Virus record (IMG/VR): IMGVR_UViG_3300037116_000299
Location: 150,301-214,300 of that record
Strand: one strand, 5' to 3'
DNA length: 64,000 bases
Position numbers and translations under genes: made by a program. This document shows, piece after piece, positions 16,731 to 61,507 of the stretch. Positions within the stretch are counted from its first letter, which is position 1. The number at the start of each line of letters is the position of its first letter. A model generated the notes under the pieces. That model did not search any database, was not told where the DNA came from, and saw only the letters and a program-made list of their open reading frames with translations.

Positions 16731-18578
16731 ATGTACAACAATCTGCCTGGGATTCTGGTCAACACCGTTGATGGCGGCCTCGCCGTTCAGCGGCAGCCGG
16801 TGGCCGACTCCACTCTTGTCATCAGCACGTCCGGCCAGGGCGTCGCCAACCAGCCTTACCAGGTTGTCGATCGCACCAAAGCGGCTCTCGAATTCGGACT
16901 GCAGGGCAACCTGATCCGGGGCATGGAAGAGGCTGCATCGAATTCCGACAACCTGATCCTGTTCCGCATGGGTACCGCTCCGATGACCCTCACTGGCATC
17001 GGCGCAGATTCCACCCCGGGCGCTTTGACTGCAGGCTTCGGTTTGGAGTTCGGCCAGGTTCAGGCCACCGCCGCGACCGACTACAAGGTCTGGTACAAGG
17101 CCGGTGTGCTCGCCGTTTACTTCGGCGAGGCTCTGATCTATTCCAACGACCCGCTGCAGACGACCGACAACGGCGACCTCACCATCGACGGCTTGATCGC
17201 CGGCAATGCAGGTCTGCAGATCGGTACCGGAGCCAGCGCGACCCTCGCCAATGCCATCACGGTTCAGGCCGCAGCGGCTCTGGCAGGCGTAGCCCATCAG
17301 GCGGCTCCGACGCTGACCGCGTGCGTAACCGGCCTCGGCCTCACCGGCCGCCAGCAGTTCGTCGCCTTGCTCAAGGCGCTCGACTTGCTCCAGGGCTTCC
17401 AGGTCAAACAGATTGTGGTTCCGGAGGCGCTCTTCAATGCGCCGAACGTGGCCTTCTATGTCGCAGGCGACGCTACCACGTCCCTCAACAACCCGGTCAC
17501 CAACCCGAGTGCGCTCGACTGGCTCAAAACCTCAGCCGATGCGTATGGCAACCTCACGTTCCAGTGGGCGTCCGAGACAACGGACTCGAACGGAACAGCG
17601 GTTGCTGCCTTCGCCGGTGTGACCCTTGCGTCGCGCAAGGCCGCGGGCTTCTCCGAAGTCAACTGGGGCTACACCCTCGCCAACTTCTGCGCGTCGGTGA
17701 GCATGCTCGGCAACGAGTGCATTGGCTTCATCGGCACGACTGGCCCTGCTTCCTACAAGCTGGTCGATGTGCGCAAGTGGGTGGGTTACCTGCCCAAGTA
17801 CGACGCCAACGGAGTTGTGACCACGGCCGGTGCAGGCCTGCTCGGCATCGCCTACACGGCGGGCACGGACACCGCGCATCTGAATCCCCTGTGTGTCGAC
17901 TTTGCTTCCGGTTCGCGCAAGCCTGGCTTCTTCCAGACGGCGAGCGGACAGTACGATGATGCCGCGGAACAGGACATCAACCAGAATCCGATCGACATCG
18001 GCGCCTACCTGCATGTGGTTGCAGACCAGGCCATTCTTTCGAATGGCTTTGCCACCAACTATGTCAGCAACATCGCGACGTTCGTTGCCGGTATCTGCGG
18101 CATGCTCGACGAGAAGCGCGCACTGACCAACCTGTCGGTCTCCGGCATTCAGCAGCTGCCGGGCCTGACCTACACACCCGGCCAGCTCGATGCGCTCACC
18201 CAGGTCAACATCAACGTGCTCAAGACCAAGACCACCGGTCCGGCGCTGTTGCATGACAAGACCTGCGCCACCGATGCCAGCGACTACACCCAGGTGCTGC
18301 GCGTCCGCATCAAGGGCCTGGTGGTTGCCACCATGCTTGCGATCGGCGACCCCTTCGTGGGAGCCAGCTCGCTCGACGGTCTCCAGCTCACCTCGCTGAA
18401 GACGGCGTTGGACACCGGACTCTCCGAACTGTCCAAGCGTGGCTACATCAACAGCCCCAGCGTGGTCATCAAGACCACAGCGGCTGAACAGCGCATCGGT
18501 CACGCCGACCTGTTCCTGAAGTTCCACCCGGCCGACCAGATGGTGCAGCTCAACGCCTATGTGGGCCTGACCCGCTAA
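16731..18578 (+). CDS. contractile tail sheath protein (615 aa)
   Basis: N-terminal LPGILVN, C-terminal sheath-like region (LTQVNINVL...QVLRVRI...IGDPFVG...ADLFLKFHPA..MVQLNAYV); followed by a tube gene. Confidence 0.8.
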   Translation: MYNNLPGILVNTVDGGLAVQRQPVADSTLVISTSGQGVANQPYQVVDRTKAALEFGLQGNLIRGMEEAASNSDNLILFRMGTAPMTLTGIGADSTPGALTAGFGLEFGQVQATAATDYKVWYKAGVLAVYFGEALIYSNDPLQTTDNGDLTIDGLIAGNAGLQIGTGASATLANAITVQAAAALAGVAHQAAPTLTACVTGLGLTGRQQFVALLKALDLLQGFQVKQIVVPEALFNAPNVAFYVAGDATTSLNNPVTNPSALDWLKTSADAYGNLTFQWASETTDSNGTAVAAFAGVTLASRKAAGFSEVNWGYTLANFCASVSMLGNECIGFIGTTGPASYKLVDVRKWVGYLPKYDANGVVTTAGAGLLGIAYTAGTDTAHLNPLCVDFASGSRKPGFFQTASGQYDDAAEQDINQNPIDIGAYLHVVADQAILSNGFATNYVSNIATFVAGICGMLDEKRALTNLSVSGIQQLPGLTYTPGQLDALTQVNINVLKTKTTGPALLHDKTCATDASDYTQVLRVRIKGLVVATMLAIGDPFVGASSLDGLQLTSLKTALDTGLSELSKRGYINSPSVVIKTTAAEQRIGHADLFLKFHPADQMVQLNAYVGLTR

Positions 18579-22377: not shown

Positions 22378-22389
22378 GAGGAGGTCCTT

Positions 22390-23067: not shown

Positions 23068-23070
23068 TCC

Positions 23071-26000
23071 GTGCCCAATCCATTCATCGTATTCGATCTC
23101 GAGGCCAGCTCCTTCAACACGGGGCTGGCCAATTCGTTTCTGAATGGAGACGGCCGCGGCGCTGACTTGATTCAGGAGTTCGTCCGCACTAGTTCCGACC
23201 CTTCCCGTCTGCAACAGCATCCCCTCTTCCAAGCTCACCAGCGTTCCCAGATTCTGCAGGTCTACGCAACCGGCGGCGCCTTTCAAGGCGGCGACGAAGG
23301 ATGGGTACGTCCGTTCGACGAGATGCGCCGGTTCAACCGGCCGATCGGGAATTCACTCTACGATGAGAGCGACTTTGCCCTCCGTCATTCCCTGCTCTCG
23401 AAGGCACAGGGAGGCCGCAACTATGAAGCCCAGCGCGTCGAGCAACTGTACCAGGGAATCTCGGACTCGATCCGGTCCCATGGCAAGGCAGTCCTCGGTG
23501 GGCACAACATCGGGTCTTATGACTTGTGGAGGCTCGAGTACGCCACCTATCAGCACGACTCCCTGCGGAATCGCCGCGGGTGGCTGGCGGACCAGGTGCG
23601 CACGGGCCGTCTCATGTTGCGGGACAGCGACGCCGAACTGCTCGGAGCTGCCTCGGCGTTTGCCCGCCAGGATGCAGACTTTGCCGCCCATCACTTGAAG
23701 GGTGCGACCGACGTGGCTTCGGCCAAGTGGGTCTCCGGTCACAACCTGACCAACATCACCGAGGCAATGGGCTATCGCAACACCAATGCCCACAATGCCC
23801 TGGATGACACCCTCGGGAATGTGGCGTTCTTCGGGGACATCGATTCGGGGAAGGCCTTCACGCCGGAATCACTGCGTTCGATCTTCCCCCGCCAGGCTGC
23901 CGCTGCCACGCGCGAAGCCGCGCCGCTCCGGGCTACCGTGGCTGAAGCTGCAACGGAAGCGCGTTCTCTCTTCACCGGCGGAGAGAAGAAGTTCCTCATC
24001 GGCGCCGCCGTCGCCGCCGCCGCCGCCGCCGTAGGCTCTCTGATTGCGCACTCTACCCGCCGCGATCGCCAGACCCAAATCACAGGTCTTGGCGAGACCG
24101 GCATGGGCGCGCAGGGCCGCCACAGACTCACGGACTTCGGCTCTGGCTACCAGGGCCTCTCCACCTCCCCCAATCCCTTCCAGCTCGAGTCTGAGGCCGC
24201 CTACAACCCCCTGGTGCGCGCACTGGGTGTAGGCGTCACCGGCTCTGCGCTCTACGGCGCCCATCGCTACATGCTGGCGACGAGCCCGAACTATGCCAAG
24301 CGCCTCCACGGTGCTGCGCTCAAGTTCGAGCAGTATTCCCCCATGCACCTGGGGCGCACCTTCGCTGCCAGCGAACGGTTCTCGTCCTACCTGCCCAGCA
24401 AGCTGGTATTCACCCGCGGGATGCTGACCAATGACGACGGCACCCTCAATGAGGTGGGCCAGACCTTCGATCGTCAGTTCTCAGCAGCCGGACACAAGTT
24501 TGATTTCCTGAATGAGGTCACCGAAGACAATCCCCTGGTCTTCGAAGGCCGCCGCCGGGCGGGCTCCGGATCCCTGCAACTCCAGGGGCGCGGCATCGAC
24601 ATCGAGACCCGGTTCGTCCCCTCCGAGGGACGTCTGGCGGGAACCGCCGCGCGGCTTGACCAGGCGTTGGTCAACCATCCGATTCGCAGGTCGCAGGCTC
24701 AGAGTTCAGTCAAGCAGGCCTGGGGTGATTTCCAGGCAGTCCGCCGATCCCAGCGAATCTCGAATGCATCTCCCTGGTCTGAAGTCGCTAGTGCTGAAAA
24801 GCTGTATCGGCCTTTCTATACCCAGGGGCATGTCGCCGATCCTGCCGACGAGCTGTTCTCCCAGGCCCGCAATGCATGGACCCGTCTTCGGGTAGAGGGG
24901 CTCGAGGCGACCGAGCGTACCCAGAGACTCTTCGCGGAAGCAGGGTTCGGACTGAAGGCAGGTACCTGGAACAAAGCAGCTCATCTCCCCTTTGTCGGGG
25001 AAGGCGGCATGCTCAACCAGATGCTCACCAAGCGCGTCGCGCCTCTGGTGCTTGCAGCCACTGCGCTGGGCTGGCTGGACTATAAGCTGGGGCATCCAAG
25101 CAACAAGATCGTCGATCTTGGCCTGAAGGCCAATGTCCTGCGCGCCGACCTGACCGATATGGTCCCCGGCGCCCGCGGCGTCACTGACTTCTACGACAAG
25201 GTCACCCCGGGATCGCAGTACGGCCCGTTGGCGTTGCCCCTGGCCGGCGCTTTCTTTGGAGGTGTCTACCACTACGGCAAACTCCTCGGCGGCAAGTACG
25301 CCGATGAGGCAGCCAGGACCCTCGGGGCTCGTATCCTCCCTGAGATGAAGGGCCTGCGCAACTTCACCGCTAAGGGTGGCAAGTTGGTTTCCGTCGAAGG
25401 AGCTTCCGCTATCTGGAAGTCTCTCGGCGCGCCGGGCAAGGGCGCTGCCATCGGCCTGGCTGCCATGGCTCTGTTCGTGCCCGGCATGCTTGGGTCCCGT
25501 AAGAGCGGCGCCGATCTGCGCGACATCTACTCCGGCAGCGAACCGATTCCAATCAGGTCCGGCCGCTGGTGGGAAGTCGGCTCAACACCCTACGAAGGCG
25601 GACGCATCAAGGAGTGGCGTCCCCACTGGAGCGTGCTGCGCAAGAGTCATGCAGAAGACATCTCGCTCTACGGATCCGAGAAGGATAAGTGGAAGCACAA
25701 TCCCATCCTGCATCCGCTGAAGTATGCCCGCGATCCCTACTGGCTTGAGAAGCAGCATTACTACGATCGACCGTACCCGGTTGCGTCCCCGGCGTTCTCC
25801 AATGTTCCCTTGATCGGCCCGCTGCTCGCCGCGACCGTCGGCAAGTTGGTCAAACCGCCTGTGCGCATGCATGAAGAGAACTGGAATGGAGAGGATTACA
25901 CCCTCTACTCAACCCGTCTGGAACCGAAGGGCCCAGGCGCGGTCGCGCCGCCCCGTCCGGAAGACGAGTTCACCCTCAGACATGCCCTCAAGCAGGAAGT

Positions 26001-28101
26001 AGGTATCCTGGCCGAGTACACCGGACTCTACGGATTCATCGCCAGCAGCGCCTACCAGGCCATCTTCCCAGGTGTGAACCAGGGCAAGGACGTCTACTTC
26101 CAGGGCTCCCGTCAGATGGACAATTTCTCCCGCCGCTACTACGAGCGGGAGCTGGGCGCCGGCATCGCGCCGTCTCCCTCGATGAAGGAACACTTCGGAT
26201 ACACCGAGCCCTTCCGCCGATTTGTCCAGCGGGAAGACTTCTCTCCCCAGGCCAACCCACTGCGCAACCAGATGCCTGGCTGGCTGCCCGGAGCCGACTA
26301 CCTCACCAACTTCCAAATCGGCGATCCCTTCACCAAGGTCGACGAGGGCTATGCCCGCCTGCCTGGCGCCGGCTACGAGGCCCTGCATCCAGAGTTGAAG
26401 GGACTCAAGCCCGAAGACTACCCCGACATCAACAAGCTGGCCATCCTGGGTGACGTAGCCCCGTACTCGCGCGAGTACAACATCTTCCGTTCGAAGGTAG
26501 GCGCCGACTCCGCCGACAACACCGAGCTGCGCATCGAGTACGAGAAGATCCTCGACCGCGTCCGGCAGACCAGGGAGTCCGTCATCCGGATGGACGCTCG
26601 TCGCTTCACCGAGCCTGTCGCTGAGCTTGAAGGCACCGTCGAAACGGCGACGCCCGGCGGAGTCACCCTCAAGGAACACCCCGGACAACTCTTCCAGTTC
26701 TCGTCCGTGAGCATGAGTGCCGCCAGCATGTCGGCGAGCATTCTCGGCGAGCACAACAATCTGACCCGCGCGGAAGTTGCCGGACAGGTTGACGAGCGCC
26801 ATCAGAAACTGCAGGACTACCTGGCTGGGATGGTTGGATCCAAAGCCCACCTGACAGTCCCCGATGGAACACTCGGCCGGGCGGAGCGCGCACGAGCCGT
26901 CATCGAAGTCGATGGCAAGAACCTCAACCGGGAACTGATCGACCAGGGTTACGGCCAGTATCAAGAACGCCTGGGCGGAGCTGAAGCGCAGGAGATGTTC
27001 GGCGCCGCCGGCAAGACCATGGGCTCGATCGCTGAGGCCCTCGCCTTCCAGGGCGACTCCGGCCGGCTCAACCCGATGCGCTACATCCCCACACCAGGCC
27101 ACACCAAGGCCTGGCAGGAGCGCACGCCACTCGCCCAGTACATGACCAACGAGGTTGTTGGCACCCGCATGCGGCGGTGGGAACGGCCCATCCATGACTT
27201 CCTCATGCCTTACGCACGAGGCGCCTGGCAGCGGATGAGCGGTAAAGCTCTCATTCCTGAGGATGTACAGGTTCGGCGGGATCTGAACACCCTGGGCGAC
27301 ACCATGCAATATCTCCGCGGACTCAATGCGGAGACCTCGGGGACCTATACTAATAAGAAGCAGAGGACTTCTGTCGGGGCCAACCTGTTTGCCGCGTCGA
27401 CGTTTGTAGCTTCTACCCTTCCCGCCCGCGAATCCCATTACTTCCGCCAGTTCCTCAACGAGACGGATCCCGAGAAGCGGGCCTCGATTCTCGAAGTGGC
27501 TTCGACCGAGATGCAGCGCGCCCTTTCCGCGCAGTGGGTCGCTCAGGAAGCTCGCATTCAGGTAGCCAACGGCGAAGACCCTGGCCCGATCGGCGAAGGC
27601 GGCCGGCTCTACACCCAGGCCAACGTCGAGGACTACAAGAAAACCGACACCAGTCTGGACTACGGCAATTGGTTGCGATCCAAGGAGATCGCCGACTTCT
27701 TCTCCCGCACCGGGTTTGCTCTTCCCGAACAAGGATCAGCTGCATACGACGAAGCTTTGGATTATGAGGACGTCAAGCTGAAACTGATTCAACAGGAAGG
27801 GTACGACTCCCATGACTTCAACATCTTCGATGACCGGGCAGCCATGCTGTGGCGCAAGCCGTATGTGGATGGCGCTGTCCGCGAACTCACCAGTGGTGAC
27901 GATCGTTCCCCAGAACAGTTGCGGCGGGCGGTCGAACAGCTGATGACAGCCTCACACGACGCAAGATCGGATGTTCGAACTGCGGTACACGCAAGCCACA
28001 CGAATCGCGCGAGCATTCGAGTGGATGTATCTGTCGACGAGAGCGACGCACTGGTGAGAGACATTCGCCGCAACCCCGACAAGTATGCGCAGGAGACGTA
28101 A
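23071..28101 (+). CDS. tape-measure-position giant protein (1676 aa) with N-terminal DEDDh 3'-5' exonuclease domain
   Basis: ExoI FDLE (D9,E11), ExoII GHNIGSYD (D151), ExoIII HNALDD (H241,D246); several hydrophobic helices; degenerate SNase-like segment near 26620-26970. Confidence 0.7.
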   Translation: MPNPFIVFDLEASSFNTGLANSFLNGDGRGADLIQEFVRTSSDPSRLQQHPLFQAHQRSQILQVYATGGAFQGGDEGWVRPFDEMRRFNRPIGNSLYDESDFALRHSLLSKAQGGRNYEAQRVEQLYQGISDSIRSHGKAVLGGHNIGSYDLWRLEYATYQHDSLRNRRGWLADQVRTGRLMLRDSDAELLGAASAFARQDADFAAHHLKGATDVASAKWVSGHNLTNITEAMGYRNTNAHNALDDTLGNVAFFGDIDSGKAFTPESLRSIFPRQAAAATREAAPLRATVAEAATEARSLFTGGEKKFLIGAAVAAAAAAVGSLIAHSTRRDRQTQITGLGETGMGAQGRHRLTDFGSGYQGLSTSPNPFQLESEAAYNPLVRALGVGVTGSALYGAHRYMLATSPNYAKRLHGAALKFEQYSPMHLGRTFAASERFSSYLPSKLVFTRGMLTNDDGTLNEVGQTFDRQFSAAGHKFDFLNEVTEDNPLVFEGRRRAGSGSLQLQGRGIDIETRFVPSEGRLAGTAARLDQALVNHPIRRSQAQSSVKQAWGDFQAVRRSQRISNASPWSEVASAEKLYRPFYTQGHVADPADELFSQARNAWTRLRVEGLEATERTQRLFAEAGFGLKAGTWNKAAHLPFVGEGGMLNQMLTKRVAPLVLAATALGWLDYKLGHPSNKIVDLGLKANVLRADLTDMVPGARGVTDFYDKVTPGSQYGPLALPLAGAFFGGVYHYGKLLGGKYADEAARTLGARILPEMKGLRNFTAKGGKLVSVEGASAIWKSLGAPGKGAAIGLAAMALFVPGMLGSRKSGADLRDIYSGSEPIPIRSGRWWEVGSTPYEGGRIKEWRPHWSVLRKSHAEDISLYGSEKDKWKHNPILHPLKYARDPYWLEKQHYYDRPYPVASPAFSNVPLIGPLLAATVGKLVKPPVRMHEENWNGEDYTLYSTRLEPKGPGAVAPPRPEDEFTLRHALKQEVGILAEYTGLYGFIASSAYQAIFPGVNQGKDVYFQGSRQMDNFSRRYYERELGAGIAPSPSMKEHFGYTEPFRRFVQREDFSPQANPLRNQMPGWLPGADYLTNFQIGDPFTKVDEGYARLPGAGYEALHPELKGLKPEDYPDINKLAILGDVAPYSREYNIFRSKVGADSADNTELRIEYEKILDRVRQTRESVIRMDARRFTEPVAELEGTVETATPGGVTLKEHPGQLFQFSSVSMSAASMSASILGEHNNLTRAEVAGQVDERHQKLQDYLAGMVGSKAHLTVPDGTLGRAERARAVIEVDGKNLNRELIDQGYGQYQERLGGAEAQEMFGAAGKTMGSIAEALAFQGDSGRLNPMRYIPTPGHTKAWQERTPLAQYMTNEVVGTRMRRWERPIHDFLMPYARGAWQRMSGKALIPEDVQVRRDLNTLGDTMQYLRGLNAETSGTYTNKKQRTSVGANLFAASTFVASTLPARESHYFRQFLNETDPEKRASILEVASTEMQRALSAQWVAQEARIQVANGEDPGPIGEGGRLYTQANVEDYKKTDTSLDYGNWLRSKEIADFFSRTGFALPEQGSAAYDEALDYEDVKLKLIQQEGYDSHDFNIFDDRAAMLWRKPYVDGAVRELTSGDDRSPEQLRRAVEQLMTASHDARSDVRTAVHASHTNRASIRVDVSVDESDALVRDIRRNPDKYAQET

Positions 28102-29171
28102 TGCAACCGCACAGCATCACCCTTGACCCCGAGCTGCACAGCGTTGATATCCGCGAGATTGAACGTCGCCTGAAAGAAAGGGTGGCTGGTCAAGATCCGG
28201 CCATTTCACAGTTGGTGGGCTTGCTCGAAACCTACTTTGCCGGCTACAACGACCCTAATGCTCCTGTGGGCGTGGTGCTTGCCCTGGGCCCGTCCGGGAC
28301 CGGCAAGACCAGTCTGATCGAAGCTCTGTGCGAGATACTCTACGACAACCCCAAGGCGCATGTTCGGATGAACTGCGCGGACTTCAAGGAGTCCCAACAG
28401 ACCCAGCGGATTGTCGGAGCGCCTCCGGGCTACATCGGTTTCAAGGACAAGTCGATCGAGACGTATTTGACCCAGGAGAATCTGGACCGCCATCACACGG
28501 CGAAGATGAAGCTCAGCGTCGTCCTGCTGGACGAGATCGAGGAAGCTCATAGCGCCCTCTATGACTACCTGCTGGCCGTATTCAATGACGGCGAAGGCAT
28601 GGTCAGCGGCAAGCTGGTCAACTTCCGCAACACCCTGTTTGTCATGACCTCGAACCTGGGGACCTCCACGAAGTCCAGCCTGCTTGGCTTTACGGCCGAC
28701 CAGGTCGCCGCCCATAACCACCAGAACGAAGCATCGATCCGCAAGGCAGTGCAGGAGCATTTCAAGTTCAAGTTCCTGAACCGCATCGACGAAACCATGA
28801 TCTTCGAGGCGCTGTCCAAAGAGACCATCGACCTGATCTTCGACATGCAGGTGTGCCAGATCCGCCGCAGGCTTCTGATCTCGAAGCAACCCGGTCCGCA
28901 GTACGTGTTCAAGATCCAGGACGATGCCCGCCAGGAGCTGGTCCGCCGCGGCTTTGACATCAAGTTTGGAGCCCGTCCCCTGAAGCGTGTCCTCCGCCGG
29001 GTCATTACCGACAAGCTGGCGGCTCTGATGCGCAGCGGCCAGGTGGAACACGGCGACCTGGTGGTGATCGATTACACCGGCATTCGCTTCATCTACGAGA
29101 AATACAACGGTGACGAAATCGGCCAGCTCTCGGACCCGCAATGGGCCGAGTTCAGCAGGATCATCGACTAG
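28101..29171 (+). CDS. stand-alone ClpA/B/C D2-type AAA+ ATPase
   Basis: VAGQD, Walker A GPSGTGKT, pore loop GAPPGYIG, Walker B LLDEIE, sensor-1 TSN, Arg finger NRID, sensor-2 GARPL; no D1 or N-domain. Confidence 0.9.
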   Translation: MQPHSITLDPELHSVDIREIERRLKERVAGQDPAISQLVGLLETYFAGYNDPNAPVGVVLALGPSGTGKTSLIEALCEILYDNPKAHVRMNCADFKESQQTQRIVGAPPGYIGFKDKSIETYLTQENLDRHHTAKMKLSVVLLDEIEEAHSALYDYLLAVFNDGEGMVSGKLVNFRNTLFVMTSNLGTSTKSSLLGFTADQVAAHNHQNEASIRKAVQEHFKFKFLNRIDETMIFEALSKETIDLIFDMQVCQIRRRLLISKQPGPQYVFKIQDDARQELVRRGFDIKFGARPLKRVLRRVITDKLAALMRSGQVEHGDLVVIDYTGIRFIYEKYNGDEIGQLSDPQWAEFSRIID

Positions 29172-29329: not shown

Positions 29330-32300
29330 ATGCCAAATCCCCTCCCATCGATGACCCGAACCGCCCTCAACTCCCTCAATGAGGGTGTTGACGGCGTGCG
29401 TGCATGGGCGAATCTCAGCCTGCTGCACTCCAGGGTGGGTATGGGAGCGGGCATTGCCATGCTGGCAGCTCCGTTGTTCCTGAAGAATGACGAGCGCGGT
29501 TACTTCCAGACGGCTGCGATGACCACTCCCTTGATCGCCGCCGGCGCCATGGTAGCGCCGCGGCTGTTCCCGACGCTGCAGCGCGAAGGTAAACGCCTCA
29601 TCGACGTGGTCAAGCAGGTTCCTACCGACTACGGCTTTCAGAGCGGGGTCTACAACGCCGAGAGCGGCGCAATGAACCTATCCGAACTGCGCCAGGCCTT
29701 CGAAGGCGGACGCATCTCCTCCGCGGATTACAACCGAGGTTTGCTGCGCTATCACGGTGACATTGCCGCCAGCGTGATCAGTCCCGACGAGATCGACCGG
29801 CAGTTCCTGTCGGCATCCCGCACCTTCTCCGAACTGTACAAAGATCCCACCAAGCACCGCATGCTCGAGAACGCGCTGTACCGCGCGACGCTGAGCCAGG
29901 AAAGCGCCGGCGAGAAAGCTGCCTGGAACGACCTGACGGCGGTTGCACCAAAGATGTCGCTCAATGAGATCGACGACCTGTTCGACGCCTACTCCAAGAA
30001 CCCGGACTGGCTGAAACAGGTCAACTACCGAATGCAGGAAGCCCGCAAGGCAACTACATCCGGCGCCACCATTCCCTCAATCGACACCCTGGTCGATGCG
30101 AATGCCGAGTACGTGCACTCTTACAGCCTGGATACAGATCAGGGCATGGCGATGCTCAAGAACTCGCCGTTCCAGGATGAGATGAGCGAGATCGAGACCC
30201 TGCTCGGCACTCAGGGTGCGGGCTGGAAACGATCTGACTTCGAACTGCAGGTTCTGCCTGATCGCAACCAGGCAGTCAACCGCATCCAGGGCCTGATGGT
30301 TCGGGGCGAGCTGTCGATTCCTTTTGCTGATGCGGACGGCGGCGTGCGCCTGGGCAGCCGGTTCGACCGGCACGGGGCCTCCCGCTTCTTCATCACCCAC
30401 AACGACCGGCTCTCCTCCCAGGTCTATGCCCTGCGCGGGCTGCAGAGCGGCCCCGCCGCCATGCCGAGTGTGGCCGAGGAGCTGGCGCGCGCTCAGTTCA
30501 ACATTCAGGGCGATGCAGGTGCATTGCGCAACCAGAAGTTCTTCTTTGGCAAGCAGGGTGTCATGGGCAATCTGCCGAACTCATTTCCCACCGAACGAGG
30601 CGCAAAGGGATTTGCCGATCTTCGTCCGGAAGAGATGATGGCCGCGATCAAACATCAGACCGAGGGGCCGGATGGCCTGGTCCGGATGTCAGGCGGTACG
30701 GGTCTGGACATCTATGAAGATCGCTCACTGCGGTTGATCGAGCCCCAGGGCGTGCACTCGCGTGAGGCGGAGAGTCTGCGCGGCAAGGCCGTCAACAAGG
30801 GCGTCTCCGCCTGGGTAGCTCCCGGCCATGAAGGCTTCTCCGCCACCAACGCCGTGGATCTTCCTGAGTTTGCGATGCGGACCTACCAGGTGTCGGGCAG
30901 CCAGCATGCCTTCTTCAGCGAGATGCCGGAATGGAAGGCGATCGAGAACGACGTCAACCAGCAGTTCGGTTATATGGAAGCTGCCGGTTTCGGAGGCAGC
31001 TCCGCCCTGGAAGAAGAGGCACGACAACTGTCTGTCGATGTCGCCTTGAGCAAGATTGGCGCTCGGGAACGCATGATCACCTTCATGGCAGGAGATGCGG
31101 GTGTTGGTATGGAAGCAGCCGAGGCCATGTACACCAAGTTCCTGCCATTCCTGGCCAATCCCAAGAACTACGAGGCCATGCGATCGCTCTCCTATCTGGG
31201 AGATGGATCCAGAATCATGGGCAACAGCATCGGCGCTGGCTTCACCCAGACCCGCTCGGTGCGCCTGCACGAGAGCCTGCTCACCGAAGGCATGCTGAAC
31301 GGGGAGACCATTCCCGAAGGCACGCCACTGGGCTTCGAGTACGGCAACGCCGTGTTCCCCAACGGGGAGCGCAACAAGATCGTCTCGCACTCGAGCACCT
31401 TCAACGAAGACGGGTCAATGACCTTCCAGATCGAAGAGAACCTGGGCAGCCAAGGCCTGAAGACGCACGGCTACACCAAGCAGACGACTGTGCTCGGGCT
31501 CAACGACCTGACCCTGGACCGCGTGCGCCGCGGTACGAATGCGTGGCATCAGGCGACCGGCAGCGGTGGTGTGGTCGATGAGCGAGTAGCCGCCTTCACC
31601 CTGGAGGGTTCCAACTCGGCCAAGGCCAAGAACCCCCTCTCCATCATGGAGAACATGCTGGGCGCCACGCTGGGCGATGTCCAGCAGGCAAACGGTGAGC
31701 TGCCCGACTTTCTCAATGCCGGCCTCAAGCAGCTGTCGCCCTACGGCTATTCGTTTGAGAACGGCGGACTGCTCAGCGACTCGTCGAAGTTCCTGAGCAT
31801 GGAGCATGCTCCTGCGAACTACACCGCTGTGGCCGAGATTATGCACGGCTTGATGGAACAGACCGGCGCGGCCATCAAGGCCGAGCAAATCAAGCTGGAC
31901 GCATCCATGCGCGGCTACATTGACTGGTCCATGAAGAACTCCAACGGGTCTTATACCGACTACAAGACCCGCTTCGGCATGCCCGAATCTCTCAGCGTAT
32001 CCGATCACATGGCCCTGAACCACGCCGGTGAGGTTCGGATCACGCGCGACGCACTGCAGCAGTTGAACATTATGGGCTACCACGAGGTTGCCAAAGAGAT
32101 CAACGACCGCCTGCAGACCGACGGACTCCCGAGTATGACCCAGGACTTCCTCAAGCACATCGAGAAGGACGGCCAGGACTTCTCCGGTCAGTTTGGTGAT
32201 ACCACCGTTTCGCTCGCTGATGCAATGGGAGGTTCCGACCTGCGCCTGGGCACCGCCGCTGGGCGCTCGGGTACGATCTTCGACCCAAAGAATCCGCTTG

Positions 32301-34279
32301 CCCAGAAGAACTACTCCGTCCTGGCCAATGTGGAAGGCAAGGACTATTACATCCCTGCCCTGGGGCGAGAAGCCTTTGGAGGCGGAGCAAACGCATACGG
32401 CACCGACGGTTACTCGGCCAACACGTGGGAGGGCCAGTTCAAAGATGTGCTGCAGGCTGCCGGCGGCGACAAGGAACCCTTCGAAGCGAAACTCAAGACT
32501 TACACCGACACCGTGAAACAGAAGGTGGGGATGGGCAAGGAGAGTGTGTGGCGCCCGTCGTCCGTTGACCCTCTGGGCATGGAAGGGCGCGCCGCCTCGC
32601 GCGCTTCGTCTCTGCGCTACGCGGATGGTTCCGTAAACCCCTACGAGATCGGAGTGGGCAACCGTTATCTGGATCTGATGGCCGCCGACGATGCAGCCGC
32701 TCTGCGCCGCGGTGGTAGCCGAGCATCTCTGCTCTTGCGTCACCCGATCAACGCTCCGGCCATCACCGTGATGAAGTACGACCCGCGGCTGGACAACACC
32801 TGGGACATTGGAGTGGATCCTCTGCTGCAGTTGATCGATAAGGGCGACACCGACGGCGATCGTATGTCAGCCCATCTGATCAACGGGGACCACTTCACCA
32901 AAGAAGGTTTCGCCAACTTCATGAAGAATGAAGTTCACGGATCTCAGAGCCTGCAAAGCAGTCAGGTCAAGTTCAACCGAATCTTCAATGGTGATGAGGG
33001 GCCCGTTCCCTTCAAGGACTGGTTCGCCGAAGCAGGTGAAGGCGCCCGGCGGCGCAACGGGTTTGCCACCTTCGCAGGAGTTGATGTCCGCCGCGCCCTG
33101 ATGGCTCGCACCGCCGGCGCCGACGTCGGCATGCTGTCGAACACCTTTGAGCTGATGGAGACCACGATCGCGCACAGCAATTCGATCCGCATGCCTGCCG
33201 AGCGTCTACTTGCCCACCAGACCCTGTTCGATATCGTCAAGCAATCCTCGATTGCCGCCCAGAAGTTGAAGAAGGGGGACGCGGTCGGGGACTACACCCA
33301 GCTTATGGCCTGGAACAACAAGCTGCGTGGTTCCCTTGCAGATCGGTCTGCCAATGGCCAACAGGGCTTTATGAAGGCCCTCATGGAAGGCGCTGAGAAG
33401 TTCGGCAAGGATGTCGACATCAACGATGAACACGTTGGAATGGGCATTGCCACCCAGGCAGAGCTGGAAGCTGGCAGTCAAATCAATCCCTACGCGCGCT
33501 TGCTCGAGCACAAGGCTGATCTCTTCGGACGGGTCCACTCTAGCTTCGACCCGCGACAGGCAGATGCCCATAAGCTATGGACCATGTCCGCCGCTGATGC
33601 CGAGAAGTTCTACGGCAACGTCACCGGCCGGATGACCGACGATATGCTTCCCCTGATCCAGGCGGCAGCCAACCGAGGCAGCGCAAGCAATTTGAGTGCT
33701 GCGGTTCTGGGAGCTGAGAACGAAGCCAACAAGGTGGCGCAGTTTGCCGGGAAGGCACGGCGGGCGGCCGCCGGGTTGGTCGATGCGGCCGGGCAGTCTG
33801 CGGAAGAAGTCATGCGGACCGCTCGGGGAGCTGGCGTCAGTAAGGTCCTGGGCATCGGCATGGCAGCCGCGGCTGCAGGAGGCCTGCTGTTGGGGTCTCT
33901 GCACAGCCCGCGCGAGGGACAGGCTTTGGCTCCTCCATCGGGTAATGCCCAGCGTCCGGAAGAACGGATCGGAGTCGAAGATCGCATTCCAGGAGAACCT
34001 GAGCCTGGGGCGATGGCACCTGCCAACCCACCGCGTATGGTGAGGTCAGCTCGGCAGGGTGTACGCACTTCCGTCGTTGCCCCCATGGGTCGTGCGACCC
34101 AGCTCGAAGTCCACATGAAGGCCGACGACCGTAGTCGAGCGGCCGAAGCTGCCCGTCTTGCCGCAAGACTTGCCTCCGGCGATGGGAACTCCAGCACCAC
34201 GATCAATTACCGCGACACCACTCGACTGGACAGTCTCCGCACCCGGGACAAGGTCCGCGAGGCGATGAACGAAAGCTAA
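29330..34279 (+). CDS. putative single-chain two-barrel (DPBB) RNA polymerase, probably virion-packaged (1649 aa)
   Basis: Beta-like half: GDGSRIM (D625), GLKTHGYTK (K711,K717). Beta-prime-like half: LLRHP (R1137) ... DPLLQLIDKGDTDGDRMSAH (D1173/D1175/D1177). Hydrophobic segments near both termini. Confidence 0.7.
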   Translation: MPNPLPSMTRTALNSLNEGVDGVRAWANLSLLHSRVGMGAGIAMLAAPLFLKNDERGYFQTAAMTTPLIAAGAMVAPRLFPTLQREGKRLIDVVKQVPTDYGFQSGVYNAESGAMNLSELRQAFEGGRISSADYNRGLLRYHGDIAASVISPDEIDRQFLSASRTFSELYKDPTKHRMLENALYRATLSQESAGEKAAWNDLTAVAPKMSLNEIDDLFDAYSKNPDWLKQVNYRMQEARKATTSGATIPSIDTLVDANAEYVHSYSLDTDQGMAMLKNSPFQDEMSEIETLLGTQGAGWKRSDFELQVLPDRNQAVNRIQGLMVRGELSIPFADADGGVRLGSRFDRHGASRFFITHNDRLSSQVYALRGLQSGPAAMPSVAEELARAQFNIQGDAGALRNQKFFFGKQGVMGNLPNSFPTERGAKGFADLRPEEMMAAIKHQTEGPDGLVRMSGGTGLDIYEDRSLRLIEPQGVHSREAESLRGKAVNKGVSAWVAPGHEGFSATNAVDLPEFAMRTYQVSGSQHAFFSEMPEWKAIENDVNQQFGYMEAAGFGGSSALEEEARQLSVDVALSKIGARERMITFMAGDAGVGMEAAEAMYTKFLPFLANPKNYEAMRSLSYLGDGSRIMGNSIGAGFTQTRSVRLHESLLTEGMLNGETIPEGTPLGFEYGNAVFPNGERNKIVSHSSTFNEDGSMTFQIEENLGSQGLKTHGYTKQTTVLGLNDLTLDRVRRGTNAWHQATGSGGVVDERVAAFTLEGSNSAKAKNPLSIMENMLGATLGDVQQANGELPDFLNAGLKQLSPYGYSFENGGLLSDSSKFLSMEHAPANYTAVAEIMHGLMEQTGAAIKAEQIKLDASMRGYIDWSMKNSNGSYTDYKTRFGMPESLSVSDHMALNHAGEVRITRDALQQLNIMGYHEVAKEINDRLQTDGLPSMTQDFLKHIEKDGQDFSGQFGDTTVSLADAMGGSDLRLGTAAGRSGTIFDPKNPLAQKNYSVLANVEGKDYYIPALGREAFGGGANAYGTDGYSANTWEGQFKDVLQAAGGDKEPFEAKLKTYTDTVKQKVGMGKESVWRPSSVDPLGMEGRAASRASSLRYADGSVNPYEIGVGNRYLDLMAADDAAALRRGGSRASLLLRHPINAPAITVMKYDPRLDNTWDIGVDPLLQLIDKGDTDGDRMSAHLINGDHFTKEGFANFMKNEVHGSQSLQSSQVKFNRIFNGDEGPVPFKDWFAEAGEGARRRNGFATFAGVDVRRALMARTAGADVGMLSNTFELMETTIAHSNSIRMPAERLLAHQTLFDIVKQSSIAAQKLKKGDAVGDYTQLMAWNNKLRGSLADRSANGQQGFMKALMEGAEKFGKDVDINDEHVGMGIATQAELEAGSQINPYARLLEHKADLFGRVHSSFDPRQADAHKLWTMSAADAEKFYGNVTGRMTDDMLPLIQAAANRGSASNLSAAVLGAENEANKVAQFAGKARRAAAGLVDAAGQSAEEVMRTARGAGVSKVLGIGMAAAAAGGLLLGSLHSPREGQALAPPSGNAQRPEERIGVEDRIPGEPEPGAMAPANPPRMVRSARQGVRTSVVAPMGRATQLEVHMKADDRSRAAEAARLAARLASGDGNSSTTINYRDTTRLDSLRTRDKVREAMNES

Positions 34280-34282: not shown

Positions 34283-37200
34283 ATGAGTGTTACCTTCTCC
34301 ACCAGCAACTCGGGCCCTTCGTCTGCCGGCTACTTCCGGATCGGCTTTGTCACGCTGCAGATCCCGCCTCAGAACATCGTGACCTCGCGCGTCGTCAACA
34401 ACGACAAGCTGGCCACTCTGCGCGGCATGAACGAGATGTTCCGCAAGACCGGTCAGGCTCGCTGGGACGTAACCGTGAGCTGGGCCGCCATGATGGGCGG
34501 CGCCACACCCGAAGCCAAGTACCAGCAGTGGAATGATCTGCAGAACGTCGCCGCCATGTTCAAGGCAGCTCCCTTTGTCGAAGTCGAGTCACCTCACCTG
34601 CGCCAGGTCCTGGCCCCTCACGATCCGCTGATGGCTTATCCCCACCGGCTGGGGATGGCGTTGCGGCAGCTACGCGTTGATTCCCATCCCGATATCGTGG
34701 ACACCCTTCTGGTCACGTTGACGATGACCTACTTCAACTTCGGTCCCTACTCTGTGGCCTTCGACTATGTGGGCGACGAAGGACAGCCAGTCAGCGCCGA
34801 TCAATGCACCAAGTTCAAGAACTACATCGCCATGTGGCGCGCGAACAATATGGACCACGTCTCCGCGCGGGACGGCGACCCGATCGCACCGCTGTGGATG
34901 GCACAGGATCCAGGCGAGATGGCCCTGAAGTACCGGATCTACAACCCGGTTCCAACCGGTCAACTGCCGGACTTTGGAACCATGGTCATGCCTGGCGGCG
35001 CCCAGGTGGGCACGACAGTGCTGCCCAGCACCTACACTCCAGCGTCAGCGACATCTGCCGCGGCCGGCAAAGCGAGCAAGGGAACTCTGCCTCCGGATAT
35101 CGAAGCTCTGATTCGGAAGACGGCACTTACGGTCAAAGGGTACTGTGATCCGGCTATTGCCTGTGCAGTCTGTCTCACCGAAAGCGCTGGAAACCCAACT
35201 GCTCACAATGCAGGATCGACAGCACAGGGTCTCTTTCAGTTGCTGGCAGGCACGCGCCAGTCCCTCAACGTGGCGGACGGCTTCAATGCACAGCAGAGCG
35301 CCCAAGGTGGCTGCCAGTACCTGGCCGATCTGTTCAAGAAACTGGGCACCTGGGAGCTTGCCGTTGCTGGTTTCAACCAGGGATCCGGCACCATCGTTGC
35401 TTATCGGGACGGCAAGGCCTTGACCGACAAGAGCAACGGGCACGTGATCAATCCGAACAAGCTGGTGACCGGTGGAATTCCTCCGGATCCTGCTGTGCAG
35501 CGGTACGTTTCAACCATCCTGCGCAATGCACAGATGAAGTTCGGATTCACCGGGCAGACAGCACCTCAGCCAGGCTCCCAGCGGCCACAGACCGCACAAG
35601 TGGCACCGGCCGCTGCGACCAACAGCGCCACATCGCCCGCCACTTCCACCAGCAATCCAATGACAGCGACGGACTCCGCGACCGAACAGGCGTTCCAGGC
35701 CCAGGCTACCGAGATGGCGGCCGACGGTTGGAGTCTTGATCATCGGTCGGACACCGCGGGCGTCGGGATCTGCTTCTTCTACAAGGAAGCCGAAGTGAGG
35801 ATGGCTCCGCTCGATTCGTCTACGGCGGATGTCACCGGCGGCATCTGGCCCACCCAGTTCTCGGTTCTGCTGGTGAACAATCTGGCGCAGATCCCTCTGT
35901 CCGGTTATCAGTATCCGACCTATCAGCATCTTGGCCCCTGCAGTTCGCTGGTGCAGATCTCGTTCATGTCCAAGGGCGAGCGCGCCGACGAAACCCAGGA
36001 ACCTGTGCACGAAGGCCTCAGGTCGCTATCCTCCATGGCTCACTTCATGGAACAACAGCACCTGCGTCTGCGCACGCAACTGCGCACGCCCAATTCCCTG
36101 CATCGGATGCAGGCAGTCTACGTTGAGAACCAGGTCCTGAACATGCTCGGCATCTACGGCCTCATGCTTGACCAGGTCACTACCGAGACATTGCCCGAGT
36201 CCTCGGACCTGGTCACGGCGCAGCTGACGGCCAGCCAGTACGAGAACCGCTTCGAAGAGATCGAGCCCTACAAGTTGAACGGCATCTCCCAGGCCTACAA
36301 CCAGGGGTTGAAGGACCTGGTGCTGACCGACAATACCATTCAGCAGGCACCTTCCGATGTCCAGGGACCGTTGAAGCCCATCTTGAACTACCGCACCCAG
36401 GCAGATAACGCAGATGAAAATGCGATGATCGCGCGCCTGATGGAAGTCGCGGCTCAGCCGTCGTCGACTCTGTTCACGTACATGGCAGGTGCACCCACTT
36501 TCACCATCAGCCAGGTCGACGCCGCCCAGATCACCTACCAGACGGGAGTGGACTGGTCGAAGTATCCGGTCGCACTCGCCCGGGTGAAGCAACTCCAGCA
36601 GACTGGCGATGCTCAGACCTGGACGATGGCCGACTACCTGATGATCAAGAGCGTGGCCTGGAAGGTCTACAAGCCGGTTAATCTGGGCGGCAGTATTCAA
36701 CACGTCGACTCAACCTTCCAGGGCAACACCCGCCGGACGATGGTCCAGGATGCGTATCAGCGGCTGTTCGCGTACTTTGCCGCGAGCGACACCGGACTGC
36801 GCACCGCTCTCAACCAGGTGATGAACAGCCCAGCCCTGGCCGCCAAGGTCAAGGGCGCAGTGCCCTCCGGGGACCCGTCGCTGGCGTCACCAGGATCCAA
36901 CGACCACGGCGCCTACCGGGATATGGGTTTGAACACCATCCTGTTGAACGGCGAAGACTTCAACCCCGGCATGTACTTTGTCAACAACAACGAACAGTAC
37001 AAGACACTTGCGAAAGGCGCCCTGCTGGATGTGATGAGGTCGACGGCATCGGCGGCGGCGCAGACCAACAGCAATGACAACAGCCAGCAGCTGCCGAATT
37101 CAGTGGCCCCAATCTCCTCGACGACATCTCTGACTCCGACAAACCTCCCCGTAGATCAGGCAGGACAGATCAACCTGCCGGCAGGCCTCAAGTCGATCCC

Positions 37201-61334: not shown

Positions 61335-61378
61335 GACTTCTTTCCGAACCCCCGTATGCAATATCAGGAAGTATACCT

Positions 61379-61430: not shown

Positions 61431-61507
61431 GCGCCCGTAGCTCAGCTGGATAGAGCGGCAGCCTCCGAAGCTGTAGGTCAGAAGTTCGAATCTTCTCGGG
61501 CGCACCA
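61431..61507 (+). tRNA. tRNA-Arg (anticodon CCG), 77 nt with encoded CCA
   Basis: GCGCCCG acceptor pairs with CGGGCGC; D-loop AGCTGGATAG; anticodon arm GCAGC-CTCCGAA-GCTGT; T-loop GTTCGAAT; ends ACCA. Confidence 0.95.

What the first reader, a model, noticed from the sequence alone, without database searches (positions are those of the whole stretch)
28101..29171. Stand-alone Clp D2 ATPase that keeps a ClpP-docking-like LGF loop
Seen: a single AAA+ module with all motor motifs and pore loop GAPPGYIG; after sensor-1 it reads MTSNLGTSTKSSLLGF (LGF at 28683-28691). Known: ClpA/ClpC/ClpX dock on ClpP through an (I/L/V)GF/L tripeptide at this position, while ClpB lacks it. Inference: a phage-encoded minimal unfoldase that could recruit host ClpP to degrade host or defence proteins, or mature the giant virion proteins on either side. 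No clpP gene is present in the window.
Basis: partly seen in the sequence, partly recalled or inferred. Interest (0 to 1): 0.62.

Follow-up and report, generated by a model that had tools for sequence, protein, structure and literature searches.

The report
Phage single-ring Clp unfoldase in tail module
A temperate giant phage of Acidobacteria carries a one-ring Clp-type protein-unfolding motor that keeps the loop used to dock on the ClpP protease, and its gene always sits between three giant tail or ejection proteins, so it probably handles those proteins, though ClpP binding is still untested.

Summary
Window 28101-29171 (+) encodes a 356-aa protein that is only the D2 half of a Clp/Hsp100 ATPase. 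All motor motifs are intact, and LGF (residues 195-197) lies on a flexible loop after sensor-1.

It is not a one-off. It belongs to a strongly supported clade of stand-alone D2 proteins: 11 phage and 17 cellular members, mostly Acidobacteriota. All 28 carry x-G-F/Y at this loop, whereas ClpB-type D2 domains lack it.

The genome is a 214-kb temperate contractile-tailed phage, integrated at a tRNA-Arg gene of an acidobacterial host. It has no clpP of its own; relatives of the host do.

The gene's start overlaps the stop of a 1676-aa neighbour. In the window and five related contigs the order is the same: giant protein, ATPase, giant protein with RNA-polymerase catalytic motifs, giant protein with a lytic transglycosylase.

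Best reading, about 0.4: a late-expressed unfoldase that docks on host ClpP and acts on the giant tail or ejection proteins. A ClpP-independent loader or chaperone is the main rival. ClpP binding remains untested; the one complex prediction gave no verdict. I rate it a new variant of a known kind.

The parts
28101..29171 (+). Gene for the 356-aa stand-alone Clp/Hsp100 D2 ATPase (P0001)
   Evidence: ORF. Pfam AAA_2 plus ClpB_D2-small. D2-only matches to ClpB/ClpC/ClpA. AF2 model has pLDDT 89.2, and its best fold matches are the D2 of ClpC in ClpC-ClpP complexes and ClpB NBD2.
28091..28103 (+). AGGAG ribosome-binding site (28091-28095) and TAATG stop/start overlap with the upstream giant gene (28099-28103)
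   Evidence: Read directly from the sequence. No terminator-like or promoter-like site lies between the genes.
28287..28310 (+). Walker A GPSGTGKT (residues 63-70)
   Evidence: G63, G66, G68 and K69 are invariant in A1 and in the 71-sequence alignment A2.
28416..28439 (+). Pore-1 loop GAPPGYIG (residues 106-113)
   Evidence: G106, P108, P109 and Y111 are invariant.
28518..28541 (+). Walker B VVLLDEIE (residues 140-147)
   Evidence: D144, E145 and E147 are invariant in A1.
28647..28655 (+). Sensor-1 TSN (residues 183-185)
   Evidence: Invariant in A1 and A2.
28683..28691 (+). LGF tripeptide (residues 195-197) on the loop between the sensor-1 strand and helix 199-220
   Evidence: G196 is invariant; position 197 is F in 10 of 11 and Y in 1. 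It aligns with the LGF of Streptomyces ClpC1 8xon. The loop is mostly coil in the model; the 191-200 block has pLDDT about 63. x-G-F/Y is present in all 28 stand-alone D2 proteins examined.
28782..28784 (+). Arginine finger R228 (in NRID)
   Evidence: Invariant in A1 and A2.
28812..29066 (+). D2-small (lid) domain, including sensor-2 GARPL (residues 290-294)
   Evidence: Pfam PF10431 at 1.6e-15, residues 238-322. G290, A291 and R292 are invariant.
29079..29168 (+). Family-specific C-terminal extension (residues 327-356) beyond the region matched to ClpB and ClpC
   Evidence: PDB and NCBIfam alignments end at about residue 326-333. W348 is invariant; Y335, L343 and F351 are nearly invariant in A1. 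The model shows a strand plus two short helices. Its role is unknown; oligomerisation or partner binding is inference.
23071..28101 (+). Giant protein 1 (1676 aa) with several hydrophobic, membrane-like segments, in the tape-measure position after two small ORFs
   Evidence: ORF. No Pfam, PHROG or PDB hit. Counterparts in L191 and L192 carry DUF559 and MTES_1575 domains. The same position is kept in five related contigs.
29330..34279 (+). Giant protein 2 (1649 aa), a candidate single-chain two-barrel RNA polymerase with hydrophobic segments at both ends
   Evidence: R1137, P1139, D1151, D1173, D1175, G1176, D1177 and H1182 (the DxDGD block) are invariant in six homologues at 31-48% identity. 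K486 is also invariant; it lies in an NKGV stretch that is not conserved in the two most distant homologues. All top-50 Foldseek PDB hits of a low-confidence model are RNAP beta-prime chains.
34283..39973 (+). Giant protein 3 (1896 aa) with a lytic transglycosylase domain
   Evidence: Pfam SLT at 3e-13, residues 285-374. The C-terminal part matches phrog_20474 at 1.6e-34 and virion or baseplate proteins of Bacillus jumbo phages.
16731..18578 (+). Tail sheath gene, marking the start of the tail block that holds the ATPase
   Evidence: phrog_16991, tail sheath, 2.2e-36.
41382..42593 (+). Baseplate J-like gene downstream of the giants
   Evidence: Pfam Baseplate_J at 2.5e-22.
60204..61361 (-). 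Tyrosine integrase at the prophage end
   Evidence: Pfam Phage_integrase at 2.2e-16 plus the SAM-like N-domain.
61431..61507 (+). tRNA-Arg (CCG) next to the integrase, the likely attachment site
   Evidence: ARAGORN on the genome gives 211731-211807, which is window 61431-61507.

Best explanation
The gene encodes an active, ring-forming AAA+ protein unfoldase made of a single Clp/Hsp100 D2 module. It belongs to a distinct stand-alone-D2 family found both in bacteria (mainly Acidobacteriota, the host phylum) and in this phage group.

It is made together with the late tail genes. It most likely threads the giant, membrane-segment-bearing tail-lumen or ejection proteins encoded around it, or their assembly helpers.

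Its conserved LGF loop most likely plugs into the hydrophobic pockets of the host's ClpP. That would give a phage-specified Clp protease that trims, quality-controls or clears these proteins during tail assembly.

Shown: the domain make-up, the intact motor motifs, the conserved loop at the ClpP-docking position, the conserved gene order, the coupling to the upstream gene, the lack of phage clpP, and ClpP in host relatives.

Inferred: hexamer formation, ClpP binding, and the identity of the substrates.
For: Motor and fold:
-.

Loop:
- The LGF aligns with the ClpC1 LGF, which inserts into the pocket between two ClpP protomers (PMC11005422).
- Position 196 is G in all 11 family members; position 197 is F in 10 and Y in 1. 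The rest of the loop varies.
- In the motif survey, hits without a GF in this loop have ClpB-like loop sequences or were named ClpB by JGI, while hits with I/V/L/M-G-F have ClpC-like loop sequences.
- All 28 members of the stand-alone D2 clade keep x-G-F/Y. The clade has 100% SH-aLRT support, and the cellular members form their own 100% clade.
- PDB entries 4d2q and 4d2x are ClpB carrying the ClpA loop, bound to ClpP (titles). A grafted loop is therefore enough for docking. That is established knowledge.

Partner availability:
- No PF00574 in the phage.
- The host flank's transketolase is 82% identical to that of Acidobacteriota genome G035. G035 has a tig-clpP locus.

Link to the giants:
- The same order, giant, ATPase, giant, giant(SLT), appears in L001, L002, L191, L192 and L194, at 44-62% ATPase identity.
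- TAATG stop/start overlap and an AGGAG site.
- No terminator-like or promoter-like site between the genes.
- The block lies between the tail sheath gene and Baseplate_J.
Against: - There is no direct evidence of ClpP binding. The complex prediction gave no verdict.
- Two of 11 phage-family members have T or K instead of a hydrophobic residue at the first loop position.
- Processive ClpP degradation of the phage's own structural proteins is not an obvious need.
- From general knowledge, isolated D2 modules of two-ring Clp proteins oligomerise poorly. Ring formation here must therefore rely on family-specific features.
- In the most distant member (P0013, contig L193) the downstream neighbours differ: Peptidase_C1 and Phage_endo_I.
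- The cellular relatives are not next to clpP.
Confidence: 0.4

Rival explanations
1. ClpP-independent loader or chaperone. The ring unfolds or holds the giant, hydrophobic tail-lumen or ejection proteins so that they can be fed into the tail tube or baseplate hub. The GF loops dock on a phage ring such as the tube, hub or terminator, or serve another contact, rather than on ClpP.
For: - Strict synteny and translational coupling with the giants inside the tail block.
- Giants 1 and 2 carry hydrophobic membrane-like segments and large enzyme-like regions that could not sit folded in a tube lumen.
- There is a precedent for an RNA polymerase fused to a tape-measure protein and ejected through the tail (PMC10770324).
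- T or K at loop position 1 in two members.
Against: - The only known partner of this tripeptide in this loop is ClpP.
- The cellular sister clade keeps the same motif without any phage tail.
- Clp relatives that do not use ClpP (ClpB type) lack the motif.
- I know of no phage tail-assembly pathway that needs an AAA+ unfoldase.
Confidence: 0.25
2. One reading: with host ClpP it degrades host or anti-phage defence proteins, as a take-over or counter-defence factor. Its place among the tail genes is incidental.
For: - The conserved ClpP-type loop and the absence of phage clpP.
- Phages are known to redirect host Clp proteases: phage ClpS and adaptor-like proteins in PMC7824862, and the title of PMC6873191.
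Against: - The gene is translationally coupled to a structural giant gene inside the late tail block, and it keeps that exact place across distant relatives. Take-over genes are usually early and more mobile.
- It has no N-terminal adaptor or substrate domain.
Confidence: 0.15
3. A captured host housekeeping gene. It does in the infected cell whatever the cellular stand-alone D2 protein does, namely general proteostasis, with no specific tie to its neighbours.
For: - The closest cellular relatives are chromosomal stand-alone D2 genes of Acidobacteriota and other phyla, with ordinary neighbours such as SDR and LptF/G genes.
- A close host relative, G150, has one.
Against: - The phage clade is old and diverse (38-72% identity) yet holds a fixed position between the giants.
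- The tree places phage and cellular members as separate deep groups, not as a recent transfer.
Confidence: 0.1

Closest known systems
D2 ring of ClpC/ClpC1 and ClpA (two-ring, ClpP-docking Clp ATPases)
   Same: - Same AAA_2 plus D2-small fold and the same motor motifs.
- Same flexible loop after sensor-1 carrying L/I/V-G-F; the LGF aligns with that of ClpC1.
- The top structural matches are ClpC chains in ClpC-ClpP complexes.
   Different: - No N-domain, no D1 ring and no M-domain; it is only 356 aa.
- Scores are far below the ClpA equivalog cut-off: 192 bits against 993.
- It has a family-specific 30-residue C-terminal extension.
- In the tree it is separated from two-ring D2 domains by a long, fully supported branch.
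ClpB / Hsp104 D2 (NBD2)
   Same: It gives the best whole-sequence scores: TIGR03346 at 1e-69 and T. thermophilus ClpB NBD2 at 4.8e-55, with 31-34% identity over the whole module.
   Different: - ClpB-type sequences lack the x-G-F motif in this loop.
- No M-domain or D1.
- 236 bits against the 1232-bit cut-off.
ClpX (single-ring ClpP partner)
   Same: The same logic of architecture: one AAA+ ring, with an I/L-G-F loop for ClpP (PMC11005422; PMC7112952 listed).
   Different: - It is not homologous at family level: ClpX models score only 15-20 bits against cut-offs of 359-371.
- It has no zinc-binding N-domain.
- The module is of D2 (AAA_2) type.
Cellular stand-alone D2 proteins (about 380-430 aa) of Acidobacteriota, Acidimicrobiia, Binatia, Myxococcota and others. 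No dedicated NCBIfam model was found.
   Same: - Same one-module architecture, including the N-terminal stretch, and the same [LIVM]-G-F loop.
- They form one 100%-supported clade with the phage proteins.
   Different: - They are chromosomal, with housekeeping neighbours.
- They are about 30-70 residues longer.
- They form their own sub-clade, separate from the phage proteins.
- They are uncharacterised as far as my searches show.
Clp-like ATPases of jumbo and huge phages (Klebsiella phage K64-1 ClpA; uncultured huge phages LR756504/LR756508; uncultured Caudovirales A0A6J5MAM5)
   Same: - They are phage-encoded Clp/Hsp100-type ATPases.
- The huge-phage versions also carry I/V-G-F loops.
- Iyer et al. 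2021 suggested translocase or virion-assembly roles for such proteins.
- A0A6J5MAM5 is also 356 aa and single-module.
   Different: - The K64-1 and huge-phage proteins have two rings and are 647-709 aa.
- Identity is only 24-36%.
- I did not look at the gene context of any of these phage proteins, so whether they sit beside giant tail proteins is unknown.

Membership tests
Clp/Hsp100 AAA+ ATPases (D2-type module) | AAA_2 ATPase domain followed by the D2-small lid domain | tested here: met
   PF07724 at 100.7 bits (cut-off 27) and PF10431 at 57.4 bits (cut-off 21.9). The fold matches ClpC and ClpB D2 with E about 1e-29.
Clp/Hsp100 AAA+ ATPases (D2-type module) | Walker A, Walker B, sensor-1, arginine finger, sensor-2 and an aromatic pore loop | tested here: met
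   K69, D144/E145, N185, R228, R292 and Y111 are all invariant in A1. All but D144 and R292, which are nearly invariant, are also invariant in A2.
Class 1 Clp ATPases (ClpA, ClpB, ClpC, ClpE, ClpV) | Two AAA+ rings (D1 and D2) plus an N-domain | tested here: not met
   The protein is 356 aa. All matches cover only the C-terminal D2 part of the models, and scores are 5-7 times below the equivalog cut-offs. There is a single Walker A.
ClpB disaggregase | M-domain coiled coil and no ClpP-docking tripeptide | tested here: not met
   No M-domain region is present. LGF is present where ClpB-type sequences have none.
ClpP-partner unfoldases (ClpX/ClpA/ClpC/ClpE) | [I/L/V]-G-[F/L] tripeptide on a flexible loop after sensor-1 | tested here: met
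   LGF is at residues 195-197. It aligns with the ClpC1 LGF. The loop is mostly coil; the 191-200 block has pLDDT about 63. It is conserved as x-G-F/Y in the family.
ClpP-partner unfoldases (ClpX/ClpA/ClpC/ClpE) | Physical docking on ClpP and ATP-dependent delivery of substrates | tested here: inconclusive
   The complex prediction with two copies of the ClpP of a host relative gave no verdict. It needs biochemistry.
ClpX | ClpX-type AAA+ module and a zinc-binding N-domain | tested here: not met
   NF003745 scores 20 bits against a cut-off of 359, and TIGR00382 scores 15 bits against 371. There is no N-terminal domain.
Stand-alone D2 clade (unnamed; phage plus cellular) | Single D2 module of about 350-430 aa, monophyletic apart from two-ring Clp D2 domains, with an x-G-F/Y loop | tested here: met
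   The clade of 28 has 100% SH-aLRT support. The motif is in all 28. No dedicated NCBIfam model exists.
T6SS ClpV | Two rings plus an N-domain that binds the contracted sheath | tested here: not met
   The TIGR03345 match covers only the D2 part, 168 bits against a cut-off of 885. There is no N-domain.

The most novel reading that the evidence does not exclude
The ATPase is a dedicated loading motor of a contractile phage tail. A six-fold ring would dock through its GF loops on a six-fold tail part (tube, hub or terminator) rather than on seven-fold ClpP. It would thread three giant cargo proteins, unfolded, into the tail lumen: a tape-measure-like protein, a two-barrel virion RNA polymerase and a transglycosylase. 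That would be a phage counterpart of cargo-loading ATPases of contractile injection systems, built from a Clp D2 module.
Probability: 0.15. Interest if true: 0.85.

Novelty: new variant of a known kind. Interest (0 to 1): 0.55.

Why it matters
It is not known how phages put very large enzymes into a narrow tail or send them through it. Examples are virion RNA polymerases and cell-wall hydrolases.

Here an unfolding motor is fixed in the genome between three such proteins. That makes the question testable with a handful of mutants and pull-downs.

If the LGF loop does bind host ClpP, this would be a phage that supplies its own specificity subunit for the host's protease. It would also reveal a third, minimal class of ClpP partner, a stand-alone D2 ring, that is present in many soil bacteria as well.

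Few phages of Acidobacteria have been characterised, so a near-complete 214-kb temperate one has value in itself.

Tried and rejected
Searches and predictions that led nowhere:
- Complex prediction with P0001 and two copies of the ClpP of host relative G035 gave a score of 0.00 and no verdict. It is evidence neither for nor against binding.
I therefore have no expression data, and read laying was not used.
- Megablast of 23000-35000 against phage records found no match.
No close relative turned up there.
- tblastn against phage records returned mostly bacterial contamination or two-ring Clp genes.
- Giant 2 relatives were not found in the 401 Acidobacteriota genomes searched. That is a sample, so it is not evidence of absence.
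- The word search with giant 2 found only itself.
- Integrase homologues and their clusters carry no organism names. The host was instead inferred from the flanking transketolase.
- Giants 1 and 2 have no Pfam, PHROG or PDB sequence hits. My by-eye reading of a DEDDh exonuclease at the N-terminus of giant 1 is therefore unconfirmed.

Ideas considered and rejected:
- ClpV-like sheath recycling. There is no N-domain, only the D2 part matches, and a phage sheath is not reused.
- HslU/HslV-like or papain-like phage peptidase partners. The genome has no PF00227 and no PF00112.
- ClpB-type disaggregase. The loop motif is present and the M-domain is absent.
- A test of whether cellular stand-alone D2 always co-occurs with ClpP. 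Four of five extra genomes have ClpP. The one without is a 0.7-Mb Saccharibacteria bin, whose D2 protein groups tightly with an Acidimicrobiia one. Incompleteness or mis-binning cannot be excluded.

Housekeeping:
- Genome G027 was flagged as unpublished. No claim here rests on it.

Full report
**1. The observation**

Window 28101-29171 (+) is an open frame of 356 codons. Pfam finds AAA_2 (1.1e-28, residues 55-231) and ClpB_D2-small (1.6e-15, residues 238-322), both well above their cut-offs.

NCBIfam models of ClpB, ClpA, ClpK, ClpG and ClpV all match, but only over their C-terminal D2 part. For example, ClpB positions 558-849 of 853 match. Scores are five to seven times below each family's cut-off.

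Against solved structures, the best sequence matches are T. thermophilus ClpB NBD2 (4.8e-55) and S. aureus or B. subtilis ClpC (about 1e-51). Again only the D2 region matches.

The motor motifs are all present: Walker A 63-70, pore loop GAPPGYIG 106-113, Walker B ending at 147, sensor-1 TSN 183-185, Arg finger R228 and sensor-2 R292. They are invariant among homologues.

The quoted string and the LGF coordinates (28683-28691, residues 195-197) are exact. PF00574 (ClpP) is absent from the window and from the whole 214,300-bp genome record, while the same search finds it in 12 of 14 control genomes.

**2. The loop**

- When residues 165-245 are searched alone, the best matches are ClpC1 proteins. 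In the alignment with Streptomyces ClpC1 (8xon) the LGF falls exactly on the query's LGF. M. tuberculosis ClpC1 has its LGF two residues further along. ClpB aligns with a gap and has no such motif.
- The ClpC1 LGF loop is the element that inserts into the hydrophobic pocket between two ClpP protomers (PMC11005422).
- Among 120 word-search hits, sequences with ClpB-like loop sequences, or named ClpB by JGI, have no GF here. Sequences with ClpC-like loop sequences have I/V/L/M-G-F 12-17 residues after TSN.
- An AlphaFold2 model built on 71 sequences has mean pLDDT 89.2. Residues 185-198 are mostly coil, and confidence drops to about 63 around the motif. That is as expected for a flexible docking loop.
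- Foldseek ranks ClpC chains from ClpC-ClpP complexes first (9a66, 9rai, 9if4), followed closely by ClpB NBD2.

**3. A family, not a one-off**

The word search found about a dozen proteins of 354-368 aa at 38-72% identity. All are single-module.

In their alignment G196 is invariant. Position 197 is F in ten and Y in one. Position 195 is L or I in nine, T in one and K in one. The residues around the motif vary freely.

A scan of one genome per species turned up cellular stand-alone D2 proteins of about 380-430 aa. They come from Bryobacterales, Terriglobia, Acidimicrobiia, Binatia, Myxococcota and other groups. Every one has [LIVM]-G-F.

In a maximum-likelihood tree the 11 phage and 17 cellular stand-alone proteins form one clade with 100% SH-aLRT support. 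A long branch separates it from the D2 domains of two-ring Clp proteins. The cellular ones form their own 100% clade, and the phage ones form two groups in an unresolved three-way split (the smaller tree agrees, with the loop columns left out).

NCBIfam has no dedicated model for the cellular proteins, and a literature search found no description of them. Their neighbours are housekeeping genes such as SDR and LptF/G, not clpP.

**4. The genome and host**

The record is classed as a provirus and estimated 99% complete. The window holds:
- a tail sheath gene, 16731-18578;
- Baseplate_J, 41382-42593;
- a tyrosine integrase, 60204-61361 on the minus strand;
- directly beside the integrase, tRNA-Arg(CCG) at 61431-61507.

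This is a temperate, contractile-tailed jumbo phage.

A metagenome contig carrying the identical integrase continues into host DNA. The transketolase there is 82%, 74% and 71% identical to those of three Acidobacteriota genomes, against 32-39% for most other full-length matches in that phylum sample. The host is therefore an acidobacterium.

The closest of those genomes, G035, has a tig-clpP locus and two two-ring Clp genes. One of the two has a GLGF loop. Another, G150, has a cellular stand-alone D2 gene.

**5. The neighbourhood**

The ATPase start codon overlaps the stop of the upstream 1676-aa gene (TAATG), and AGGAG lies six bases upstream of the ATG. No terminator-like or promoter-like site separates the genes.

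The local order is as follows.

| Position | Product |
|---|---|
| 16731-18578 | tail sheath (615 aa) |
| 18688-23067 | 232, 308, 505, 147 and 225 aa proteins |
| 23071-28101 | giant 1 (1676 aa) |
| 28101-29171 | ATPase (356 aa) |
| 29330-34279 | giant 2 (1649 aa) |
| 34283-39973 | giant 3 (1896 aa, SLT domain) |
| 41382-42593 | Baseplate_J (two small ORFs lie before it) |

These assignments rest.

The core order giant, ATPase, giant, giant(SLT) recurs in contigs carrying family members at 62, 55, 52, 48 and 44% identity: L194, L001, L191, L192 and L002. In L001 the contig ends just before the ATPase, so giant 1 is not seen there. In the most distant member (38%, L193) a partial giant precedes the ATPase, but Peptidase_C1 and Phage_endo_I follow it.

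Giants 1 and 2 contain several hydrophobic, membrane-like stretches (read), as tape-measure proteins often do. Giant 1 counterparts in L191 and L192 carry DUF559 and MTES_1575 domains.

**6. Giant 2 looks like an RNA polymerase**

- Six homologues at 31-48% identity share invariant R1137, P1139, D1151, D1173, D1175, G1176, D1177 and H1182, and also K486.
- By eye, these residues match the beta-prime motif (NRxPxLH ... NADFDGD..H) of multisubunit RNA polymerases. That comparison is from my own knowledge.
- K486 lies in an NKGV stretch that resembles the beta-subunit motif (RHGNKGV), but the NKGV part is not conserved in the two most distant homologues.
- A low-confidence model of residues 440-1340 (pLDDT 57) still retrieves only RNAP beta-prime chains among the top 50 PDB hits. 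E-values run from 3e-5 to 2e-3, but TM-scores are low.
- There is a published precedent: the tape-measure protein of Thermus phage P23-45 carries a two-barrel virion RNA polymerase (PMC10770324).

I treat this as a well-founded candidate, not a proven one.

**7. How it most likely works**

Near certain: it is an ATP-driven, pore-threading unfoldase of the Clp D2 type.

Likely: it works in the late tail and ejection-protein pathway. The support is fixed synteny across deep divergence, and translational coupling.

The GF motif is held constant in a loop that is otherwise free to vary, in both phage and cellular members. Clp relatives that do not use ClpP lack it. So the loop almost certainly docks into a hydrophobic pocket. 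ClpP is the only known partner of this kind, and the host has it.

My best explanation, at about 0.4, is a phage-specified cap for host ClpP that acts on the giant proteins or on their assembly helpers.

The main rival, at about 0.25, is a ClpP-independent loader or holdase for the giants. Iyer et al. raised that kind of role for phage ClpA- and ClpX-like ATPases (PMC7824862).

A captured housekeeping gene keeps about 0.1.

**8. Comparison and novelty**

Phage-encoded Clp ATPases are already on record:
- Klebsiella phage K64-1 ClpA.
- Two-ring genes with I/V-G-F loops in huge uncultured phages.
- A 356-aa single-module protein of an uncultured Caudovirales phage.

These come and from PMC7824862.

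What I did not find described elsewhere:
- the stand-alone D2 family with a ClpP-type loop, as a clade shared by phages and soil bacteria;
- its fixed place between three giant tail or ejection proteins, one of them an RNA-polymerase candidate.

I file it as a new variant of a known kind.

**9. Limits**

- ClpP binding, ring formation and substrates are all inferred.
- The complex prediction returned no verdict, and no expression data could be obtained.
- The 232- and 308-aa proteins after the sheath match phrog_9206, which is annotated as major head protein. Their position suggests tail tube. I did not resolve this.

Noticed in passing
window 29330-34279: This 1649-aa protein is a candidate single-chain two-barrel RNA polymerase encoded in the tail module. 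It has an invariant R-x-P ... DxDGD..H block (residues 1137-1182) and an invariant K486. All top-50 Foldseek hits of a low-confidence model are RNAP beta-prime chains. It resembles the tape-measure-fused virion RNAP of Thermus phage P23-45.
   Followed up: partly
window 23071-23880 (N-terminus of the 1676-aa protein); L191 5724-9989; L192 5745-9998: By eye, the N-terminus of giant 1 reads like a DEDDh exonuclease (DLE ... GHNIGSYD ... HNALDD), but Pfam and PDB sequence searches found nothing. The counterparts in two related contigs instead carry DUF559 and MTES_1575 domains. The giant therefore seems to carry a swappable domain at this position.
   Followed up: partly
window 60204-61507 and beyond; L171 1-9800: Integrase next to tRNA-Arg(CCG) marks the end of a temperate jumbo prophage of about 211 kb. 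The flanking host transketolase is 82% identical to that of an Acidobacteriota genome. The window's last 2.5 kb (Big_5 protein, resolvase) is probably host or another mobile element.
   Followed up: yes
L085-L102, L110, L115, L183 (genome contigs); L005, L007 (viral contigs): There is a widespread cellular family of stand-alone Clp D2 proteins (about 380-430 aa), all with [LIVM]-G-F loops. They occur in Acidobacteriota, Acidimicrobiia, Binatia, Myxococcota and others, have housekeeping neighbours, and have no dedicated NCBIfam model. They may be an undescribed single-ring ClpP partner.
   Followed up: partly
L193 2642-5486: In the most divergent family member, the ATPase gene is followed by a papain-like Peptidase_C1 gene and a Phage_endo_I gene instead of the RNAP-like giant.
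   Followed up: no
genome G000 75102-75521 and 73720-86757 (outside the window): ARAGORN predicts a permuted tmRNA-like gene with an unusually long tag ending in YLAAA, and a cluster of seven tRNA genes. The tmRNA call may be false. If it is real, a phage tmRNA beside a Clp-type unfoldase would be worth a look.
   Followed up: no
L091 (genome G404): A 0.7-Mb Saccharibacteria bin holds a stand-alone D2 gene with an IGF loop, but no ClpP was found in it. Its protein groups tightly with an Acidimicrobiia one, so mis-binning or incompleteness is possible.
   Followed up: partly
L195 2942-4936; L196 2918-4918; L197 2822-4951: Huge uncultured phages (484-636 kb) encode two-ring Clp ATPases of 664-709 aa without long N-domains. 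Two of them have IGF or VGF loops.
   Followed up: partly
window 18688-20402: Two adjacent paralogous genes (232 and 308 aa) right after the tail sheath match phrog_9206, which is annotated as major head protein. Their position suggests tail tube proteins, so the PHROG label may be misleading.
   Followed up: no
window 12567-13640 (-): A lone minus-strand glycosyltransferase-like gene (phrog_13126, 8e-24) sits inside a region of lower G+C (0.56-0.57 against about 0.61), within an otherwise plus-strand structural block. It may be a moron.
   Followed up: no
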